A DNA stretch of 64,000 nt, from positions 52,840 through 116,839 of the forward strand of contig MU626311.1 of NCBI GenBank assembly GCA_025603075.1, given 5' to 3'. The stretch comes from Neoconidiobolus thromboides FSU 785 (Eukaryota > Fungi > Entomophthoromycota). Below, piece after piece: positions 29,666 through 37,821 of the stretch (position 1 is its first letter; every line of letters begins with the position of its first letter). The notes below the pieces were generated by a model. That model had not been told where the DNA came from and did no database searches. It was given only the letters and a program-made list of their open reading frames with translations. The position numbers were made by a program, and so were the translations under genes.

Positions 29666-29736
29666 TGCGTAAACTGGGAATCGAACCCAGGCCACTTCTT
29701 TGGAAGAGAAGTATTCTACCTCTATACTATTTACGC
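29666..29736 (-). tRNA. tRNA-Gly (anticodon TCC)
   Basis: Minus strand: acceptor GCGTAAA/TTTACGC+A, D-arm GTAT...ATAC, anticodon arm CTTCT-CTTCCAA-AGAAG, T-arm CTGGG-TTCGATT-CCCAG. Confidence 0.95.
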
Positions 29737-29812
29737 CATCACGCATTATGTGTTTTTGTTAAACAATTTTATTGCAATAAAATTACAGGCTAGCAGCTAG
29801 CTACGTCAATGG

Positions 29813-29918
29813 ATATGAGGATGTATTTGTGTGTTTAAGAACTTTGCTAATAATTTTCTCACTCAAATAGCGCTTAAAAAATGGAAAAAATAATGAACCC
29901 AAAAAAACATTACTATAT
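29813..29918 (-). mobile_element. ~98-bp MITE copy (TSD ATAT/ATAT)
   Basis: Reverse-complement match to the consensus: atat|GAGGATGTATTTGTGTG...AAAAAAACATTACT|atat. Confidence 0.85.
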
Positions 29919-29982
29919 CTTACCAGAAATAATAGTAGCACTATATAAGATTTATAAGTAATCTTACCTTTTTTGTGACATA

Positions 29983-30350
29983 ATGGCAAAAGTAATCAAT
30001 TGCAACTATGAAGTCGATTTTTGCAAAATTTGGTCTACTTATCAAAAAAATTATTACTTATCAATCAAATAACATTCTCTACTATAACATTGGTCTTTAA
30101 TCTTTTGAGGAGCTATTTTGAGCTAATAACAAGTATCCAACCTTATATTATTCACAATTATGAAATAGAGATAATACTTTTATTTATAGAAGTAAAATCA
30201 AAGTTTTTTAGGCAAAAATAATCCTTTATTAGAAATTTTAGTAGATGAAATGATTGCAGTAGCTTATGGCCTATTTTTTCCATAGAGCAAAAAAGTCAGT
30301 TATTTTAAATTGTCCTATACATCTACAAAATCTAAAACCTCTAAGAAATT
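29983..30350 (+). pseudogene. Possible highly decayed Tc1-type transposase fragment
   Basis: Stop-riddled frames give SLIF*GAIL (cf. VMVWGxF/I) and, ~205 nt downstream after a frameshift, ILNCPIHLQNLKPLRN (cf. VLxWPSQSPDLNPIEN). The spacing fits Tc1. Confidence 0.35.
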
Positions 30351-30471
30351 AAAAAACGATTTTTATTTATACAATAATTGACATATGATAGCGTGGCTAA
30401 ATCATAGTAGATATTTCAAATATGTGCGAAAAAGTGGATAAGATAAAGACTATGAAAACATTTTAAATGAA

Positions 30472-33400
30472 TTAGGAAATTGAGTTTTTCCTTGAGATAG
30501 GGGAGGGGAAGGCATTAGTATCAAAGGGATTGAAGTAATTGGACCAATTAAACCAAGATTGAAAATTATTATTATTTGTGGTCGAATGCAATACCTTGCT
30601 GATATTAGATTGAAATAACTTGATCAAATTTTGAGATAATATGCTATTGTCAATAACTGCTATAGTGGGATTGATAACATCCTCAGCAATAGTACCATTT
30701 TCGTTAATAATATCCAACTTGACCTTAGGTTTTGGTAACTGATGACGTTGATTCGTTAAATTACACAACTTTTCTACAAAGGCGGTAATCTCTATTAATT
30801 GGTTCTCAAATTGATTGTTTGCATTGAGGATGTTAATATGCTTGTCTTTAATTTCGATTAACTTTAAAGATTCACAATTTTTTATGGCCAAATGAATGAA
30901 TTCTTTACTGATGGATTCCTTATAATGTAAATAATTGTTATGGATTCCGTTATAGATAACATGCTGTATCATAGTATAAAACTGATCATAACTCATGCTT
31001 TGATCCTGTTTCAAACTTGATAGGCCTGCTAATACGATCCAGAAAGTGTCGAGCTTAGAATGTAATAAGGTCAATAAGATATGGAAGTAATCCATGGTAT
31101 TTGGAGAGATGTTCATGATGATAAATTGATCCAATAATTGAATATAATTGCATTTGATGAATTTATTAAATAGCATTTCAATAGTGTATTGTTTTAAATA
31201 AATGATAATTTCAGGATATAAATTGAGGATTAATTTAATGATTTTGCTGAATTCTATTTCTACCTGTTGTTTGGTTATAAATCCTTGATATTCTGGCTGA
31301 CTTGAATATTTTTTGTGAGTGTAATAATAGCTCAATATAAAGATAGACTCAAATAAAAAGATGGGAATAATTGGCTTCGTTAATAAATTCAAGTACAATA
31401 TGGAATCAATGTCATCATTTAAATAAACCCGATTCACTTTGTAATTTAATAAGCCATCAACTTCCTCGTTATCTTCATTATCTTCCTCCCCTAACTTGAT
31501 TGTAAGGCGCTGCTCTCCAATTAAATTTAAAGCATAATTTAGCACAGCACTACTATCTTCATTCTCATTAAAATCCAAATTAAACCCCAAGTTGAATAGC
31601 TCTTTTTTAAATAAAATCAAATAATTCTGGATTTTATTTGAGGAAATTCCATCTTTGTTATTGCGATAACTTAATAACACTAATGATATTAAATTGATTG
31701 GTGATATCAATTGATTTTGACATTGCCAGGATTGGATCATATAACTAGAATGAGTCAAACTTAGGTCATTGTTATCCATCATTTTCAGTTGCTCTATTTT
31801 CATCTTTAGGTTGTTACGTTCTATGGGGTTCCCTATTGTTACCATAATCTTGCTATTCTTTTGATCCTTAAACAATTGAATTGAATTACTATTATTGTTT
31901 GTTTCCTTGTTACTTATATTACTATTCTTATCATTATTTCTGAATATAGCTTTGTTCTCATCATTAAGGTTATTATTATTAATATTATTGTATAGCTCAT
32001 TTATTAAATAATTATTATCATAATACATTTCATAATTGATAGAAATAGGGACTAACAAAATGTTTTGATTATTTAATTGTTCATTATTAATAATGTCATT
32101 AAACAAATCATCATATTGTTTCAAATCGACCATATCTTCTAATAACTTTGTATAGTCTTTAATTTGCTCGTTGCTACTATAAATTAAATCATTTAAAAAT
32201 AAGCAGATGGAATTGCTATTGTTCGTGCTATTATTATTATCATTTAATAATTTAACTAAATAAGTTTGTATTAATAATTGTACTAACTGCTCATCATTAT
32301 TGAATTGTTTGAATAATAACTTATTGTATATGATCCCCTGTTTGACTTTATAATATAATAGTTTATAACTCTGCTCAATACTTAAGATTGGCAATGGCAA
32401 ATTATAATAATAGCAGATATAAGTTAATAAATTAAAATCCAAAGAAGAAGTATGATTTGGGAGATAAATTACTTTGACTGAGTTTTGATTATTTTGATTG
32501 TTATATGAATAAATCATTTGCTTTAATTTCACTATATTATTCTTGTTGATAAGAATTGTTTGGTATTTCAAAAAGGAGGTTATATTATTAATTAATTTTT
32601 CTGGTTCAATACTATTTTCAATGACTAATAGCTCCTTTAAAATTCGATTTTGATATTTCTTACTATCCTCAGTATAATTTTGTTTCAAATAGTTCACTAC
32701 TGCTGAATCGTGGATCACTTTGCTCCTTAAGTTAACTAAACTGGATTTATCGTATAATGTTAAATTATTGTTATCAAAGATTAAATCTAAATCTTCCTTA
32801 TCATCGCTACTATTATTGTTGTTTAAATATTTGATATCTTCCCATCCCTCAATTAAGTAATCCTTCCTTAGCGTGGGATCTTCATTGAGTACAAAGTAAG
32901 ACATACCATAACAAAAATTCATAATATAATCTTTCCAATTCAAATTGATAATATCATCTGTTGAAATATCTCTGCTTAGAATACTATTTAATTGGTTTTT
33001 CTGATTCTTTTGTAGTTGTAATAAACTAAAATTTTGAAAGTACCAAGTATTGATCATAAAATGTTTAAAGCAATGATACAGGAAATCCAACTTTGGTTTT
33101 GCTTTCTTTAAATTCTCTGCTTTTTGTTTATCTTTGACCGTATTGATCATTGATAACGCCTTGAACTTGTAGTTTTGTTTTATTAGAAGCATCGCGTCAT
33201 GCTCCATATCATTTGAATATTTATGGAACGTTGGCGTAAATAAGCGCTTCTTTAGCGCCGGTAATTTGAGCCAAGAGTTGACCACATAGTTTCCGAAATC
33301 TAACCAAGTGATTGGATTGAGGCCTGATGATGAAGCATGATAAATTTTAGGGTAAACAACTTCCTCAGTGTCAATCTTTATCTTACTATCTAAATCCTTA

Positions 33401-34413
33401 ATCTGTCTTGTTTTATCTGCATAACTGATATTGAATTCAGTTCCTGGTTTACTATTGAACTCATAGCACGCTTTCAATACTATTTTTGCCAGGTAATCCA
33501 CTGGTACCAAATCTAATACCGAATCCCTTGGACCAGGGGTAGAGTCCAAGATTCCTAATCCGATATACATAGCTATAGCGTTGGCAGCTGCCACACCATC
33601 AACCCAGCCTGGAACGGGGTCATAAGCGGTGGAAGTGACTACTGTTGGTCTGACAATAGCTAAATTAAACGCTTTTCTACCATTAGCTATCTCTCTTTGC
33701 TTCATTTCTTCAGCCTTAATCAAGATCATATTCTCCGCCAATGATTTGGTAAATGTATAAGTATTTGGATAGCACGTTAAGATTTTGTCTGTGAATTGCT
33801 TGATCTGTTCCAAATCCATATTTTGTATCTGCTCGACGAGTTCTTTTACATCACCAAAGATCATAGGATAAATACGCTCATAAATTTCCTTCTCTTTACG
33901 ATTAGAATTGACATATGCTGTGGACACATGGACGAAGCCATCAAAGTTATGACATTGATCCGCTATTTCGACAAGCTGTAAGGTACCTAAAGTGTTTAGT
34001 TTTAATGAGCGATCCAAGCGCTCATTGAAGTCCACCGTGGCTGCGCAATGTATGATAATATTCAAATCATTTTTTAACATCTCTAGATCATTATCTTGAA
34101 TCCCCAAACCAGGCAAAGAAATATCACCTTGAATTGGTATAAGCTTTGGAAGGATTAAATGATAGAATTGTTTAATTGATAGATGGTCTTTTAATACATT
34201 AAATAATTTGTTGCTTAAGATCTCATCCACAATACGCTGCTTAATACTCTTGCCTTTTTTTTCTCGAATTAATAAGTAGACCTTTTCGATATGTACATAA
34301 TGGTCACGTAGTATCAATTCTAATATACACTTGCCTACAAACCCAGTACCGCCTGTTAGTAGTATGCTCTTGCCGTGTAAGAAGGAAGAGTCCAAAGGGA
34401 ATTTATTCACCAT
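30472..34413 (-). CDS. Fatty acyl-CoA reductase fused to a GPAT/DHAPAT-type acyltransferase-like domain (FARAT-like), intronless, 1313 aa
   Basis: N-half: TGGTGFVGK, IIHCAATVDFNE, HVSTAYVN, PNTYTFTKSLAE (Y219xxxK223), IVRP, PGWVD, DLVPVD, NWKDY. C-half: YLPNHTSSLDFNLLTYI (H654-X4-D), VPISINYE, KLDTFWIVL, ESISKEFIHLA. Confidence 0.9.
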   Translation of the reverse strand: MVNKFPLDSSFLHGKSILLTGGTGFVGKCILELILRDHYVHIEKVYLLIREKKGKSIKQRIVDEILSNKLFNVLKDHLSIKQFYHLILPKLIPIQGDISLPGLGIQDNDLEMLKNDLNIIIHCAATVDFNERLDRSLKLNTLGTLQLVEIADQCHNFDGFVHVSTAYVNSNRKEKEIYERIYPMIFGDVKELVEQIQNMDLEQIKQFTDKILTCYPNTYTFTKSLAENMILIKAEEMKQREIANGRKAFNLAIVRPTVVTSTAYDPVPGWVDGVAAANAIAMYIGLGILDSTPGPRDSVLDLVPVDYLAKIVLKACYEFNSKPGTEFNISYADKTRQIKDLDSKIKIDTEEVVYPKIYHASSSGLNPITWLDFGNYVVNSWLKLPALKKRLFTPTFHKYSNDMEHDAMLLIKQNYKFKALSMINTVKDKQKAENLKKAKPKLDFLYHCFKHFMINTWYFQNFSLLQLQKNQKNQLNSILSRDISTDDIINLNWKDYIMNFCYGMSYFVLNEDPTLRKDYLIEGWEDIKYLNNNNSSDDKEDLDLIFDNNNLTLYDKSSLVNLRSKVIHDSAVVNYLKQNYTEDSKKYQNRILKELLVIENSIEPEKLINNITSFLKYQTILINKNNIVKLKQMIYSYNNQNNQNSVKVIYLPNHTSSLDFNLLTYICYYYNLPLPILSIEQSYKLLYYKVKQGIIYNKLLFKQFNNDEQLVQLLIQTYLVKLLNDNNNSTNNSNSICLFLNDLIYSSNEQIKDYTKLLEDMVDLKQYDDLFNDIINNEQLNNQNILLVPISINYEMYYDNNYLINELYNNINNNNLNDENKAIFRNNDKNSNISNKETNNNSNSIQLFKDQKNSKIMVTIGNPIERNNLKMKIEQLKMMDNNDLSLTHSSYMIQSWQCQNQLISPINLISLVLLSYRNNKDGISSNKIQNYLILFKKELFNLGFNLDFNENEDSSAVLNYALNLIGEQRLTIKLGEEDNEDNEEVDGLLNYKVNRVYLNDDIDSILYLNLLTKPIIPIFLFESIFILSYYYTHKKYSSQPEYQGFITKQQVEIEFSKIIKLILNLYPEIIIYLKQYTIEMLFNKFIKCNYIQLLDQFIIMNISPNTMDYFHILLTLLHSKLDTFWIVLAGLSSLKQDQSMSYDQFYTMIQHVIYNGIHNNYLHYKESISKEFIHLAIKNCESLKLIEIKDKHINILNANNQFENQLIEITAFVEKLCNLTNQRHQLPKPKVKLDIINENGTIAEDVINPTIAVIDNSILSQNLIKLFQSNISKVLHSTTNNNNFQSWFNWSNYFNPFDTNAFPSPISRKNSIS

Positions 34414-35150
34414 ATTTTTGGTTAATTATAAGTTATGGCTAATAAATATTTCAAGTTATTTATAAAATAGAAAGAATTAAAGTTAAAAGTTTATCTTTTT
34501 GGCATCATTATATTATCTTTTACTGTTTTATTATTCTTAAACTTTAGCGGCTCTTAATCAATTTCTATTACAATTATTGTGATAAAAATTGTTGGTAATA
34601 TTTTAATTCTATTAATTTTAGTTTTACCCGCCAGAAATTCCCTCTCTTTTTAATTGATTTCACACCTCCCATTCTTTTATTTCCAAATACCAGTTTGCTT
34701 ATTAAATTATCCTAGAATATTAGCATTAGTTATTGTAAAGAGGGCCTTATGATTTTTAATTGTATGCTAATTGATGAAGATAAAAATAGATTAAACTGGA
34801 CTATTATTTTATAAAAGTAAAAATGCTCTTTAGGTAGTTATTAATTGTTTGAAAATTTTAATTAAGGAAATTTTACTATCGCTTTAATTTAATATTTCTT
34901 TTTAAGGATTTCTCTGCCTTCTTTTTTCTAAAAATTAATAGTTTAAAACCCAAGTCTTTTCAAGACTCAAAAAAAGCTAACTTTACTTATTGTTACTTGT
35001 TATTGTCTAAGCTTGAATATAATAATTTTTTACCTGGAACTAACATAAACTACAATTTCGTTTACATACTGCTTAATTCTATTTCATTAACTTTTTTGTT
35101 CCAATTACTATTTTAGTAGCCTTGAAATTTAATGTATATGGTTAAGTCTA

Positions 35151-35222
35151 AAATAAAAGTTGCTTATTGCATAAAAGTTTAAAATGATAAACATTTTTTT
35201 ATGTAAAAAGCAACTTTTATTT
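35151..35222. repeat. 26-bp inverted repeat (24/26 match, 20-nt loop)
   Basis: aaataaaagttgcttattgcataaaa (35151-35176) versus ttttatgtaaaaagcaacttttattt (35197-35222). Confidence 0.75.
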
Positions 35223-35717
35223 CGAACTTGGTTGTTGCAGCGTTTTTTCGACTTTTCCAATTTTAAGCTTAAAAATAGTTTAAGTTTGTCAACTAGACAA
35301 TTTTTCAAAAATAGAATTGCAAAAAGAAAAATAATTAAGTTTTTGAGACTGTAGATAAGTTCATAAAACTCATTTTATAAAATAATTGATAATAAATTTA
35401 TGTATTTTAACAATTAATAGTCTTTAAAATAACATTTGTATAATTTTTATAAGCATTATCCATAATACAGTAATTTCCAAACTTAATATAAATAGCCACT
35501 TAGTTTATTAAAATCATAACAATAAAAATTCATAAAGATAAAAGAGATAAAATAATATATTATAGAATTACTTCGTTCCGACTATAAATGAGTATTATAC
35601 ATTTTTTGCAGTTTTACTTAATCTATAGAATAATGTCTTCGATCAAATATCATAAATTTCTTGAAATGAATACAACATACTAATTTATAAATGTTTATAT
35701 AATAAATAACTTTCAGA

Positions 35718-36062: not shown

Positions 36063-37821
36063 ATGTCTTCTGTCACTGCTCAAACTGTCGCCACCAATCC
36101 TACCGCTAACAGTAAGTGCACTCTTTGCCATATTCAAAATTTATTTACAAATGAAATTAGCCCTCAAAAACCCATCAAGCACTATTAAAGAGATAGGTAA
36201 TCCTCATGCATTTGGTGATGTTACAGTTGATAATTCAAGTGTTACTACAGCAGAGCTCAATGACACAGGTTCTGAGTTAACAAAGGCTACTGAAATAAAT
36301 GGAGTTGTAGATCCAACCTTTGAATTCCTTAATCTGAAAGGACCAAAACCTGCTACTTTTGAAAAAGTAGCTTACTTTTTCATCAAAAGGTATTACTATA
36401 CCCTTTCTAAAGTTCCACATAAATCATATTTGTTCTATCATTCGAAAGCACTTTTGATCCACGGTGATGAAGCTCAGGATGTTCTTCCTGTTAAAGGTTT
36501 AAAGAATATTCATGAACATTTGATTAAATTAGATTTCAGCAAATGTAATATTGTGCTTACCAATGTTGACTGTACTCCTTCGGTTAATGGCTCTATATTT
36601 ATTGTGGTTATAGGCGAGGTTGCTTATTTTAGCGGGCTTCAAAAGAAGTTTATTCAATCCTTTTTATTAAAAGAAAAGTCCAATGGGTTTACCATAGTTA
36701 ATGACATTTTTAGATATATTGTTGATACTGCAGATGAATATCCATCAGGTGACTATGTAAAGTTAAAAGTTAAGGAGGATACAATCAAGTTAGATGTGGA
36801 ACCAACTGGATCTGTTCCAACATCTCCTACCTCTGAAAGCACTGTTTCTCCATCAGCTTCCGATGAAGCTCCGATCGCTGAAGATTTACCGCCAGTTGAA
36901 AACCTTCCACCATCAGTTGAAGAAATCTTGCCATCAGCTGAGGAAAAAAGCTCAGGGGCTCCAAAAACCGATGAAGTTACCCCTGAGACAACCCAATCTG
37001 GGAGCATCACTGACTTGACACTGGAGCCAACTACCACACTTACCAAAGCTGCAAAGAAGAAAAGAGCTAAAGCTCTTAAGAAAAAAGCTGTTGAAGCTGA
37101 GCAAGAAACCGGTGTAGCTGAAGTCGAAGTTAACACTAATAATAAAGCTGAGGTCGAGACTAAGATTGATGAAGTCAAGTCTGAGACCAATACCAAAGTT
37201 GAGGAAGTTAAGACTGAAGAGAAGCCTAAAACTAATGGCAACCCTGCTACGAACCCCTGTTTGCCTTCCACTCCAGCCCCAACTAAGATTCAAGAAAAAC
37301 CCAAAGCCTGGGCCAAGCTGCCACCAATTGAGTCTGCCCCTGTAGTATCTGCCACGACAAAACAGCCAATAAAACCAATTGCTCCAGCCGTTGAGAAGCC
37401 AATCGTTAGTACCCCAGTTGCTCATGATGAAAACAATGATATTTTTAAGTCGCATGTTTGTCTTCGATTTGTTAGAGAAAATACTCCAAAACCAGTTGTC
37501 ATTAAAGCACTCTCTAAGTTTGGTACTGTACAAAACGTTGAATTCAATCAAAGGATTACTTTTGCCGAGTTTACGACAGTTGAGTCAGCTTCTAAAGCTA
37601 TCACTGCTGGCCAAGTTGATATTAATGGTAATAGGGTACAAATTGAACAACGCCGTCATCGTCAAAATCACCATGGGTTTTATAACCGTAAAAATGGTAA
37701 TTACAACCGTTATAGTAAATATGGTAATAACACTTCACCTACTGGGTCTAACGAATCTGGAGATTGGTCTACTCCAAGGCCGGTTGGTAGATATTCTGGA
37801 AACAGAGGAGTAAATCATTAA
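36063..37821 (+). CDS. G3BP/Bre5/Nxt3-like protein (NTF2-like domain, low-complexity linker, RRM), 2 exons
   Basis: Intron 36112-36160 joins in frame. NTF2: FIKRYY..L...LFY...VDC..S..GSIFIVVIGE...KFIQSFLL...GFTIVNDIFRY. RRM: FGTVQNVE...TFAEFTT. Followed by an R/G/N-rich tail. Confidence 0.88.

What the first reader, a model, noticed from the sequence alone, without database searches (positions are those of the whole stretch)
30472..34413. FARAT-like fusion (fatty acyl-CoA reductase plus DHAP/glycerol-3-P acyltransferase fold) in a fungus
Seen: one intronless 1313-aa ORF. The N-half is a complete FAR (TGxTGFxG Rossmann motif, YxxxK, Sterile-type C-domain). The C-half shows GPAT/DHAPAT-family features (HX4D at H654, VPISINYE, GPAT_C-like ESISKE). 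Established: FAR-DHAPAT fusions (FARAT) in Tetrahymena and amoebozoans make both precursors of ether lipids, and fungi are generally regarded as lacking ether-lipid synthesis. Inference: this lineage may have a hidden ether-lipid or fatty-alcohol/wax module. It could be ancestral or horizontally acquired; a 3.9-kb intronless gene is unusual among neighbours with many introns.
Basis: partly seen in the sequence, partly recalled or inferred. Interest (0 to 1): 0.85.

Follow-up and report, generated by a model that had tools for sequence, protein, structure and literature searches.

The report
Fungal FARAT relic with remodelled acyltransferase
This fungal gene fuses an intact fatty-alcohol-forming reductase to a fast-evolving copy of the ether-lipid acyltransferase that has lost its substrate-binding motifs and peroxisome signal, so it is an inherited relic of the protist "FARAT" enzyme and not evidence of ether-lipid synthesis.

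Summary
Positions 30472-34413 (minus strand) carry one 1313-codon ORF, transcribed colinearly without introns. The public annotation wrongly splits it into two genes.

- **N-half:** an intact fatty acyl-CoA reductase under strong purifying selection.
- **C-half:** homologous to GNPAT/GPAT1 (profile E 1e-20; model matches human GPAT1). It keeps motif I (HX4D) and motif IV. It lacks motif II's critical Arg, all of motif III (no Arg in 128 residues) and a PTS1. It evolves 3.4-5 times faster than the FAR half.

All 27 non-fungal FARATs compared keep all four motifs, and 26 keep a PTS1.

The fusion is not rare or horizontally acquired. Relatives occur in Entomophthoromycotina, about 30 genera of Mucoromycota, and a chytrid. 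In trees of both halves the fungal proteins form one well-supported group, and every one has a non-canonical motif set. Orthologues in two relatives are also intronless.

Best reading: a vertically inherited FARAT relic that makes fatty alcohols, whose C-half is no longer a DHAP acyltransferase. The ether-lipid inference is not supported.

I found no paper describing the fungal fusion; one 2026 survey reports the pathway absent from 53 fungal genomes. Another first-stage note on this same stretch (s1-062984) also proposed a pseudo-enzyme.

The parts
30327..34615 (-). Transcribed span (mRNA with about 200 nt of 5' UTR and about 145 nt of 3' UTR)
   Evidence: RNA run X2 contigs cover 30327-32846, 32821-33005, 33027-33408, 33396-34122 and 34098-34615. 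They are colinear with the genome and show no joints. Depth is zero at 29984-30167 and 34768-35300.
30472..34413 (-). Single 1313-aa ORF including the stop codon: FAR plus GNPAT-like fusion
   Evidence: The public annotation (GCA_025603075.1, contig MU626311.1) splits it into a 693-aa model (32335-34413) and a 518-aa model (30472-32028). It leaves 32029-32334 uncalled although that stretch contains no stop codon.
33481..34359 (-). FAR catalytic Rossmann domain (residues 19-311), with TGGTGFVGK (20-28), the STAY serine (164) and YTFTK (219-223)
   Evidence: Pfam NAD_binding_4, E 1e-63. It matches the solved FAR structure 7eoz at E 9e-38. These residues are invariant in alignments A1, A2 and A5. 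Of the 33 listed differences from related transcripts that fall at residues 200-454, 32 are synonymous.
32881..33117 (-). FAR C-terminal ('Sterile') domain, residues 433-511
   Evidence: Pfam PF03015, 31.4 bits against a cut-off of 35.4. W493, Y496, Y502, G503 and V508-L509-x-E511 are invariant across homologues.
32506..32880 (-). Linker and N-terminal helices of the GPAT-like half, residues 512-636
   Evidence: This stretch aligns to residues 67-160 of human GPAT1 in the clade-only profile search. The model predicts it as helical with high confidence.
32017..32505 (-). Acyltransferase core, residues 637-799. Motif I HTSSLD (32437-32454) and motif IV VPISINYE (32029-32052) are kept. Motif II is vestigial (QGIIYNK, 32320-32340). 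Motif III is lost (LFLNDLIYSSNE, 32167-32202).
   Evidence: Motif table, hhalign register and PF01553 at 16.7 bits against a cut-off of 23. There is no Arg in residues 660-787. Clade-invariant residues cluster at motif I (p 2e-5) and motif IV (p 0.007) but not at II or III. The motif II and III loops have pLDDT below 50 in the model.
31864..32016 (-). Asn-rich low-complexity insert, residues 800-850
   Evidence: 19 Asn in residues 801-850. It has no counterpart in the relatives and pLDDT is below 50.
30853..31785 (-). GPAT_C-type helical domain, residues 877-1187, including YKESISKE
   Evidence: Pfam PF19277, E 5e-11, 42.8 bits against a cut-off of 25. pLDDT is mostly 85-96. It aligns to GPAT1 residues 406-744.
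30475..30852 (-). Poorly conserved C-terminal tail, residues 1188-1313, ending -NSIS (no PTS1)
   Evidence: It is 19% identical to Massospora and pLDDT is about 35.

Best explanation
The gene encodes one polypeptide descended from the ancestral eukaryotic FARAT (fatty acyl-CoA reductase fused to DHAP acyltransferase).

- **N-half (inferred active).** It should reduce acyl-CoA to fatty alcohol using NADPH. This is inferred from intact catalytic motifs and strong purifying selection.
- **C-half (fold shown, function inferred).** It still has the GNPAT/GPAT1 fold. It has lost the motif II and III arginines and the EG pair that hold the phosphate of DHAP or G3P. It has lost the peroxisomal signal and evolves several times faster than the FAR half. 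It is therefore no longer a DHAP acyltransferase.
- **Most likely present role of the C-half (inferred).** It acts as a non-catalytic or acyl-CoA-binding module attached to the reductase.
- **Origin.** The gene was inherited vertically within Fungi, not acquired recently.
- **Consequence.** On its own it does not indicate ether-lipid synthesis. Its expected product is free fatty alcohol, and a fatty alcohol has been reported from a relative, Conidiobolus coronatus.
For: **One gene.**
- The ORF is uninterrupted.
- An RNA contig covering 30327-32846 bridges the split in the public annotation, with no joints.
- Orthologues are single uninterrupted ORFs of 1228 aa in C. coronatus and 1265 aa in E. 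muscae.

**FAR half intact.**
- Pfam E 1e-63, and a match to FAR structure 7eoz at 9e-38.
- The Rossmann, Ser and YxxxK residues are invariant.
- Of the 33 listed differences from related transcripts that fall in the FAR half, 32 are synonymous.

**C-half homology.**
- A profile built only from the Entomophthoromycotina C-halves hits human GPAT1 (8e4y) at E 1.3e-20 over residues 67-744.
- hhalign against active FARAT C-halves gives 99.94% probability, E 4e-37.
- The AF2 model (pTM 0.79) has GPAT1 as its only significant PDB match, E 1.4e-20, TM 0.59/0.68.

**Loss of DHAPAT features.**
- All 27 non-fungal FARATs compared have PxHRSYxDF, GAFFx[RK]R, F/YxxEGxRSRxxx (GK in 25 of 27) and a motif IV that fits xPxxxxY[EDQ] (most often VPIxIxYE). 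26 of the 27 end in a PTS1.
- The window has PNHTSSLDF, QGIIYNK, LFLNDLIYSSNE and VPISINYE, and ends -SIS.
- There is no Arg in residues 660-787.
- PF01553 scores 16.7 bits here, against 85-88 bits in active FARATs.
- Motifs II and III bind the acyl acceptor, and the motif III Arg cannot even be replaced by Lys (PMC4280512). The two motif III Arg residues are proposed to bind the G3P phosphate in PlsB.

**Relaxed constraint.** The ratio of C-half to FAR-half path length is 3.4-5.0 in this clade, against 1.07-1.32 in Amoebozoa, oomycetes and Mucorales.

**Vertical descent.** Fungi separate from non-fungi on one branch with support 100/99 (FAR half) and 100/100 (C-half). The window lies inside the Entomophthoromycotina clade with support 100/99 and 97/93.

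**Fatty alcohol in a relative.** C. coronatus secretes dodecanol, and no enzyme has been assigned to it (PMC8342708).
Against: - Among the four full-length proteins of the clade, the invariant residues of the C-half cluster at motif I (9 of 32 positions, p 2e-5, including His654 and Asp659) and at motif IV (4 of 15, p 0.007). That pattern suggests the catalytic dyad and the acyl-CoA site are still used. The review read notes acyltransferases that work with HX4D alone.
- The 754-codon C-half stays open in a genome of about 27% GC and is conserved across the clade, so it is certainly not junk.
- No enzyme activity, localisation or lipid data exist for this protein.
- Whether AGPS is present in this genome could not be tested.
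- The AF2 model was built from an alignment that includes active GPAT-family members, so its agreement in fold is not independent evidence.
- RNA evidence comes from assembled contigs, not reads. Depth is about twice as high over the C-half, and a 21-nt gap (33006-33026) is uncovered, so a second, shorter transcript is not excluded.
Confidence: 0.6

Rival explanations
1. Acceptor-switched acyltransferase. The C-half keeps a working His-Asp dyad and acyl-CoA site but has dropped the phosphate-binding motifs. It would then acylate a non-phosphorylated acceptor. The most economical candidate is the fatty alcohol made by its own N-half, giving wax esters from a single polypeptide.
For: Motifs I and IV are the most conserved parts of the C-half in this clade. 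His and Asp are kept in 4 of 6 clade members despite about 3.9 substitutions per site between the window and Massospora. Motif I is catalytic, motif IV binds acyl-CoA, and motifs II and III bind the acceptor; some enzymes work with HX4D alone (PMC4280512). The FAR half would supply an alcohol at the same site.
Against: No wax-synthase activity is known to me for the GPAT1/GNPAT family. The motif III Gly and Glu, which are also implicated in catalysis, are gone. The short paralogue in C. coronatus and its near-copy P0131 have lost the His. Fourfold rate acceleration fits relaxation better than a new, tuned active site. No wax-ester data exist for these fungi in the papers I searched.
Confidence: 0.22
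2. One reading: a bona fide bifunctional FARAT that supplies both acyl-DHAP and fatty alcohol for a hidden ether-lipid pathway.
For: The domain order and homology match FARAT. HX4D and motif IV are present. A BLAST-based paper suggested that fungi may make plasmanyl lipids (PMC11225845).
Against: Motif II's critical Arg and the EGxRSR of motif III are missing, and the motif III Arg is essential in GPAT1. There is no PTS1 or PTS2, whereas 26 of 27 intact FARATs have a PTS1. PF01553 scores below threshold. The C-half evolves fast. Reviews and a 2026 survey report that fungi lack ether lipids and nearly always lack AGPS.
Confidence: 0.07
3. Two separate genes, as in the public annotation: a 693-aa FAR and a 518-aa GPAT_C protein.
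For: The NCBI record carries two models, P0087 and P0010. RNA contig depth differs about twofold between the halves.
Against: The reading frame has no stop between the two models. An RNA contig spans the gap. Orthologues in other genomes are single ORFs.
Confidence: 0.04
4. Recent horizontal acquisition, from an amoebozoan, ciliate or bacterium, explaining the absence of introns.
For: The gene is intronless while some neighbours, such as USP7 and the aaRS gene, have introns.
Against: Both halves nest inside a fungal group and broadly follow fungal taxonomy. Orthologues in the clade are intronless too. GC content of 25-37% matches the flanks. Asn-rich inserts are typical of the host genome.
Confidence: 0.02

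Closest known systems
Dictyostelium discoideum FARAT (fatA, DDB0305750) and Tetrahymena TtFARAT
   Same: The domain order is the same: FAR, then FAR_C, then the GNPAT-type acyltransferase, then GPAT_C. Length is similar (1279 aa in Dictyostelium). Homology is clear across both halves. Both proteins carry Asn-rich inserts.
   Different: The protist enzymes have intact motifs I-IV, and the Dictyostelium enzyme ends in the PTS1 tripeptide SKL; they are luminal peroxisomal enzymes required for ether lipids (PMC7375469). The window protein lacks motif II's key Arg, all of motif III, and a PTS1. Its C-half is only 16-21% identical.
Human GNPAT (DHAPAT) plus FAR1, and human GPAT1 (PDB 8e4y)
   Same: The C-half has the GPAT1/GNPAT fold. 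The protein language-model search puts GPAT1 and DHAPAT clusters first, at 0.95. The N-half is a FAR1-type reductase.
   Different: In animals these are separate proteins. GNPAT has a PTS1 and intact motifs, and mutations in motif II have been linked to rhizomelic chondrodysplasia punctata type 2 (RCDP2) (PMC4280512).
Mucoromycota 'male sterility protein-domain-containing proteins' (for example Phycomyces, Rhizopus, Absidia; about 1450-1690 aa) and the Geranomyces (chytrid) homologue
   Same: They have the same fusion architecture, belong to the same fungal group in both half-trees, and also have non-canonical acyltransferase motifs. The Mucoromycota proteins also lack a PTS1.
   Different: Their decay pattern is different. 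Motif I His is replaced by Ser (SK[TS]xxD), motif II is intact, and motif III is E[KR]ARSRTG. Their C-half evolves about as slowly as the FAR half (ratio about 1.1-1.2), and PF01553 still passes at 27-28 bits. The chytrid protein keeps a PTS1 (AKL).
Orthologues in Entomophthoromycotina: Massospora cicadina L0F63_002402, Entomophthora muscae KAJ9071370, Conidiobolus coronatus CONCODRAFT_70608
   Same: These are the nearest relatives. The FAR domain is 43-66% identical and the acyltransferase core 27-29%. They show the same pattern: HX4D and motif IV kept, motifs II and III lost, no PTS1. The C. coronatus and E. muscae genes are also intronless.
   Different: None of these is characterised. C. 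coronatus has an extra short paralogue (CONCODRAFT_9909, 905 aa) that has also lost the His and most of GPAT_C.

Membership tests
FARAT (bifunctional fatty acyl-CoA reductase / DHAP acyltransferase) | N-terminal FAR domain with the NADPH Rossmann motif and the Ser/YxxxK catalytic residues | tested here: met
   NAD_binding_4 at E 1e-63. TGGTGFVGK, S164 and Y219/K223 are invariant. Matches FAR structure 7eoz at 9e-38.
FARAT (bifunctional fatty acyl-CoA reductase / DHAP acyltransferase) | C-terminal half homologous to GNPAT/GPAT1 on the same polypeptide, sharing ancestry with known FARATs | tested here: met
   hhalign 99.94%. PDB profile hit to GPAT1 at E 1.3e-20. Fold match to 8e4y. The two half-trees are congruent.
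FARAT (bifunctional fatty acyl-CoA reductase / DHAP acyltransferase) | Acyltransferase motif I (HX4D) | tested here: met
   H654-T-S-S-L-D659.
FARAT (bifunctional fatty acyl-CoA reductase / DHAP acyltransferase) | Acyltransferase motif II (GAFFxRR, acceptor binding) | tested here: not met
   The window has QGIIYNK. One basic residue is kept and the last Arg is replaced by Leu. There is no Arg in residues 660-787.
FARAT (bifunctional fatty acyl-CoA reductase / DHAP acyltransferase) | Acyltransferase motif III (FxEGxRSRxGK, phosphate binding and catalysis) | tested here: not met
   The window has LFLNDLIYSSNE at the aligned position in MAFFT, hmmsearch and hhalign.
FARAT (bifunctional fatty acyl-CoA reductase / DHAP acyltransferase) | Acyltransferase motif IV (VPIxIxYE) | tested here: met
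   VPISINYE at 788-795.
FARAT (bifunctional fatty acyl-CoA reductase / DHAP acyltransferase) | Peroxisomal targeting (C-terminal PTS1) | tested here: not met
   The protein ends -NSIS and has no PTS2-like motif. 26 of 27 intact FARATs end in [SA][KR][LMIF].
FARAT (bifunctional fatty acyl-CoA reductase / DHAP acyltransferase) | DHAP acyltransferase activity, and co-occurrence with AGPS and ether lipids | not testable with these tools
No lipid data exist.
Fatty acyl-CoA reductase (alcohol-forming FAR; Pfam NAD_binding_4 plus Sterile) | Both Pfam domains in order, with catalytic residues conserved under purifying selection | tested here: met
   The Sterile domain is marginal by score (31.4 against 35.4), but its conserved W/Y/G/E positions are invariant.
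GPAT/GNPAT acyltransferase family (Pfam PF01553 plus PF19277) | PF01553 above its gathering score | tested here: not met
   16.7 bits against 23. Clade relatives score 15-19 bits, Mucorales 27-28 and active FARATs 85-88.
GPAT/GNPAT acyltransferase family (Pfam PF01553 plus PF19277) | GPAT_C domain above its gathering score | tested here: met
   42.8 bits against 25, residues 877-1187.

The most novel reading that the evidence does not exclude
The remodelled C-half is not dead. It would be a repurposed acyltransferase that keeps the His-Asp dyad and the acyl-CoA site but has lost phosphate binding, and it would esterify the fatty alcohol made by its own N-half. The protein would then be a single-polypeptide wax-ester (or other alcohol-ester) synthase of a type not known in the GPAT family, and possibly linked to the insect-active lipids of entomophthoralean fungi.
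Probability: 0.12. Interest if true: 0.8.

Novelty: new variant of a known kind. Interest (0 to 1): 0.52.

Why it matters
FARAT has recently been proposed as the ancestral eukaryotic entry enzyme for ether lipids. Fungi were reported to lack the pathway, apart from a few ascomycetes that acquired it by gene transfer (PMC13012113).

The window gene and its many relatives show something different. Early-diverging fungi kept the FARAT gene by descent. Each lineage dismantled a different part of the acyltransferase active site:
- Mucoromycota and a chytrid lost the motif I His.
- Entomophthoromycotina lost motifs II and III.
- All kept the reductase.

This dates the loss of ether-lipid synthesis to after the origin of Fungi. 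It gives a natural series of half-decayed enzymes for studying how a bifunctional enzyme becomes monofunctional or is repurposed. It nominates a candidate enzyme for fungal fatty alcohols such as the dodecanol of Conidiobolus. It also warns that BLAST-level calls of 'GNPAT present' in fungi overstate pathway capacity.

Tried and rejected
- **Exact look-up of the 1313-aa product:** not on record. The reason turned out to be the split public annotation.
- **Species name:** the assembly accession GCA_025603075 appears in no paper, so I give only the clade.
- **AGPS in this genome:** no tool searches the rest of the genome. First-stage notes for this genome contain no mention of AGPS or ether lipids. 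The supplements of the 2026 survey are not held.
- **Single-sequence searches with the C-half:** weak. Only 17 hits in 1.84 billion representatives, and GPAT1 at E 0.01 in the PDB. Clade profiles were needed.
- **Horizontal transfer:** rejected on the trees, the intronless orthologues and the composition.
- **Pseudogene or junk C-half:** rejected, because the frame stays open for 754 codons in AT-rich DNA and is conserved across the clade.
- **Membrane anchor or PTS2:** none found.
- **Lipid gene cluster around the gene:** none. The neighbours are USP7, an NTF2/G3BP-like gene, an aaRS, calcipressin and calreticulin.
- **dN/dS for the C-half:** not possible. Only three variants were visible there, and read laying is capped at one call.
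- **NCBIfam:** added nothing beyond thioester-reductase hits.

Full report
**Observation.**
The stretch 30472-34413 holds a single minus-strand ORF of 1313 codons. It is the only ORF of 100 aa or more in 7 kb of DNA with 24-37% GC. At this composition about 8% of random codons are stops, so a frame this long has a chance probability of about 1e-48 (my estimate).

Pfam finds four domains:
- NAD_binding_4 at residues 19-311, E 1e-63.
- Sterile at 433-511, 31 bits against a cut-off of 35.
- GPAT_C at 877-1187, 42.8 bits against a cut-off of 25.
- A sub-threshold Acyltransferase hit, 16.7 bits against 23, limited to motif I.

**One gene, expressed, mis-annotated.**
The DNA is contig MU626311.1 of assembly GCA_025603075.1. 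The public annotation has two models, residues 1-693 and 796-1313. It leaves 32029-32334 uncalled although there is no stop codon, and the second model starts right after motif IV.

RNA contigs of the same organism (run X2) tile 30327-34615 colinearly, with no joints and silent flanks. One 2520-nt contig bridges the annotated split.

Caveats on the RNA evidence: these are assembled contigs, 21 nt are uncovered, and depth is about twice as high over the C-half.

Orthologues in C. coronatus (3687 nt) and E. muscae (3798 nt) are single uninterrupted ORFs.

**The FAR half.**
It matches a solved FAR (7eoz, E 9e-38). It keeps the Rossmann motif, the catalytic Ser and YxxxK as invariant positions. 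Of the 33 listed differences from related transcripts in runs X6 and X7 that fall at residues 200-454, 32 are synonymous. I infer an active alcohol-forming reductase.

**The C-half: homologous to GNPAT/GPAT1 but not canonical.**
Alone, the C-half finds only 17 proteins among 1.84 billion representatives. Profiles give a much clearer answer:
- A profile of the six Entomophthoromycotina C-halves hits human GPAT1 at E 1.3e-20 over nearly its whole length.
- hhalign against active FARAT C-halves gives 99.94% probability.
- An AF2 model (pTM 0.79, mean pLDDT 74.8) has GPAT1 (8e4y) as its only significant PDB match. The alignment used for the model contained GPAT-family members, so this is supporting evidence only.

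In register, all 27 non-fungal FARATs compared have PxHRSYxDF, GAFFx[RK]R, F/YxxEGxRSRxxx (GK in 25 of 27) and a motif IV fitting xPxxxxY[EDQ] (most often VPIxIxYE). 26 of them end in a PTS1. The window has PNHTSSLDF, QGIIYNK, LFLNDLIYSSNE and VPISINYE, and ends -NSIS.

There is not one arginine between motifs I and IV. According to the family review, motif I is catalytic, motifs II and III bind the acyl acceptor, and motif IV binds acyl-CoA. The motif III Arg cannot be replaced even by Lys (PMC4280512). In PlsB the two motif III arginines are proposed to bind the G3P phosphate.

The predicted motif II and III loops have pLDDT below 50. No PTS2 or transmembrane segment is evident.

**Distribution and descent.**
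Profile searches recover the same fusion in several fungal groups:
- Massospora, Entomophthora and Conidiobolus (two paralogues in Conidiobolus).
- About 30 genera of Mucoromycota. These are annotated as 'male sterility protein-domain-containing protein', and several are misnamed 'cyclin-dependent kinase inhibitor far1'.
- Podila and the chytrid Geranomyces.

Careful ML trees of the two halves agree:
- The 22 fungal rows (21 in the C-half tree) are separated from the 27 non-fungal FARATs by one branch, with support 100/99 and 100/100.
- The window sits in the Entomophthoromycotina clade (100/99 and 97/93), sister to Massospora plus Entomophthora (92/92).

The fusion is therefore old and vertically inherited. 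Horizontal transfer is not needed to explain the lack of introns.

The trees contain no Holozoa, no ascomycete FARAT and no named bacteria. Six metagenome rows of unknown origin are included. The root and the position of fungi within Amorphea are therefore not established.

**Pattern of decay.**
Every fungal member deviates from the canonical motif set, but in lineage-specific ways:
- Mucoromycota replace the motif I His with Ser, keep motif II, and change the EG of motif III.
- The chytrid replaces the His, loses motif II, and keeps a PTS1 (AKL).
- Entomophthoromycotina keep HX4D in 4 of 6 proteins but lose motifs II and III and the PTS1.

PF01553 scores fall in step: 85-88 bits in active FARATs, 27-28 in Mucorales, 24 in the chytrid, and 15-19 in this clade.

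The C-half evolves 3.4-5.0 times faster than the FAR half in this clade, against 1.07-1.32 times elsewhere. Against Massospora the window is 66% identical in the FAR domain and 27-28% in the acyltransferase core and GPAT_C.

**What the C-half does now.**
It is not junk: 754 codons stay open and are conserved across the clade. It cannot be a standard DHAP or G3P acyltransferase.

Within the clade, invariant residues cluster at motif I (9 of 32, p 2e-5) and motif IV (4 of 15, p 0.007), but not at motifs II or III. This leaves two options:
- A non-catalytic or acyl-CoA-binding appendage of the reductase. I favour this because of the rate acceleration, the loss of the motif III Glu and Gly, and the loss of His in the paralogue.
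- An acyltransferase with a new, non-phosphorylated acceptor, for example the fatty alcohol itself.

No tool available here can decide between them.

**Literature.**
- FARAT is characterised in Tetrahymena and Dictyostelium. The Dictyostelium enzyme is peroxisomal via SKL and required for ether lipids (PMC7375469).
- A 2026 survey reports all four pathway enzymes absent from 53 fungal genomes, with FARAT present only in Trichoderma and Thozetella through gene transfer (PMC13012113).
- A 2024 paper lists BLAST hits for FAR (including one in E. muscae) and GNPAT in fungi and suggests plasmanyl capacity. It does not note the fusion or the motif state (PMC11225845).
- Searches for FAR together with Mucor or Mucoromycota found no description of the fusion.
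- C. coronatus secretes dodecanol, and no enzyme has been proposed for it (PMC8342708).

**Verdict.**

It is a new variant of a known kind, and one member of a widespread but apparently undescribed fungal family of FARAT relics.

Another first-stage note on this same stretch (s1-062984) proposed a pseudo-enzyme. I had reached the same idea from alignment A1 before seeing it, and I tested it here.

Noticed in passing
window 30472-34413 and 36151-37821: The public annotation truncates or splits genes at Asn-rich low-complexity stretches. The FARAT-like ORF is split into 693-aa and 518-aa models. The NTF2/G3BP-like gene is annotated as 262 aa, although a 556-aa ORF is open at 36151-37821.
   Followed up: partly
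L001:8001-12031 (Massospora cicadina JAKSZP010010638.1): The Massospora orthologue's gene model joins two overlapping reading frames with a 20-nt 'intron' at residue 520. The first frame continues with the conserved GWEC motif. This is a frameshift in the assembly or the gene, not a real intron.
   Followed up: partly
L002:1-18718 (Conidiobolus coronatus KQ964604.1): The short FAR paralogue CONCODRAFT_9909 (905 aa, motif I His lost, GPAT_C truncated) is flanked by four Methyltransf_7 (SABATH-type carboxyl methyltransferase) genes. This may be a small lipid-modifying gene cluster.
   Followed up: no
proteins P0111, P0126, P0147, P0149, P0122 (oomycetes, Hondaea, Spongospora): FARATs with all four motifs intact and a PTS1 occur in oomycetes, a labyrinthulomycete and a plasmodiophorid. 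The 2026 survey states that, within Diaphoretickes, only ciliates have FARAT. The Durusdinium entry groups with Hondaea and may be a contaminant.
   Followed up: partly
proteins P0014, P0060, P0065, P0070 and others (Mucoromycota): In Mucorales fusions the catalytic His of motif I is replaced by Ser (PVSKTxxDQ). Even so, their C-half evolves as slowly as the FAR half and shares a conserved C-terminal ...NL[KR]S ending. This suggests a maintained but unknown function that differs from this window's clade. Several are misnamed 'cyclin-dependent kinase inhibitor far1'.
   Followed up: partly
window 29666-29983: A tRNA-Gly(TCC) gene lies at 29666-29736 on the minus strand. Next to it, a short stretch at about 29800-29910 has very high summed depth in the DNA-run contigs and many divergent loose ends, so it is a high-copy repeat (probably a MITE).
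   Followed up: partly
window 30327-34615: The RNA contig covering the C-half has about twice the depth of the contigs covering the FAR half, and the contig break falls at the domain boundary (about 32821-32846). This could be 3' bias or an additional internal transcript.
   Followed up: no
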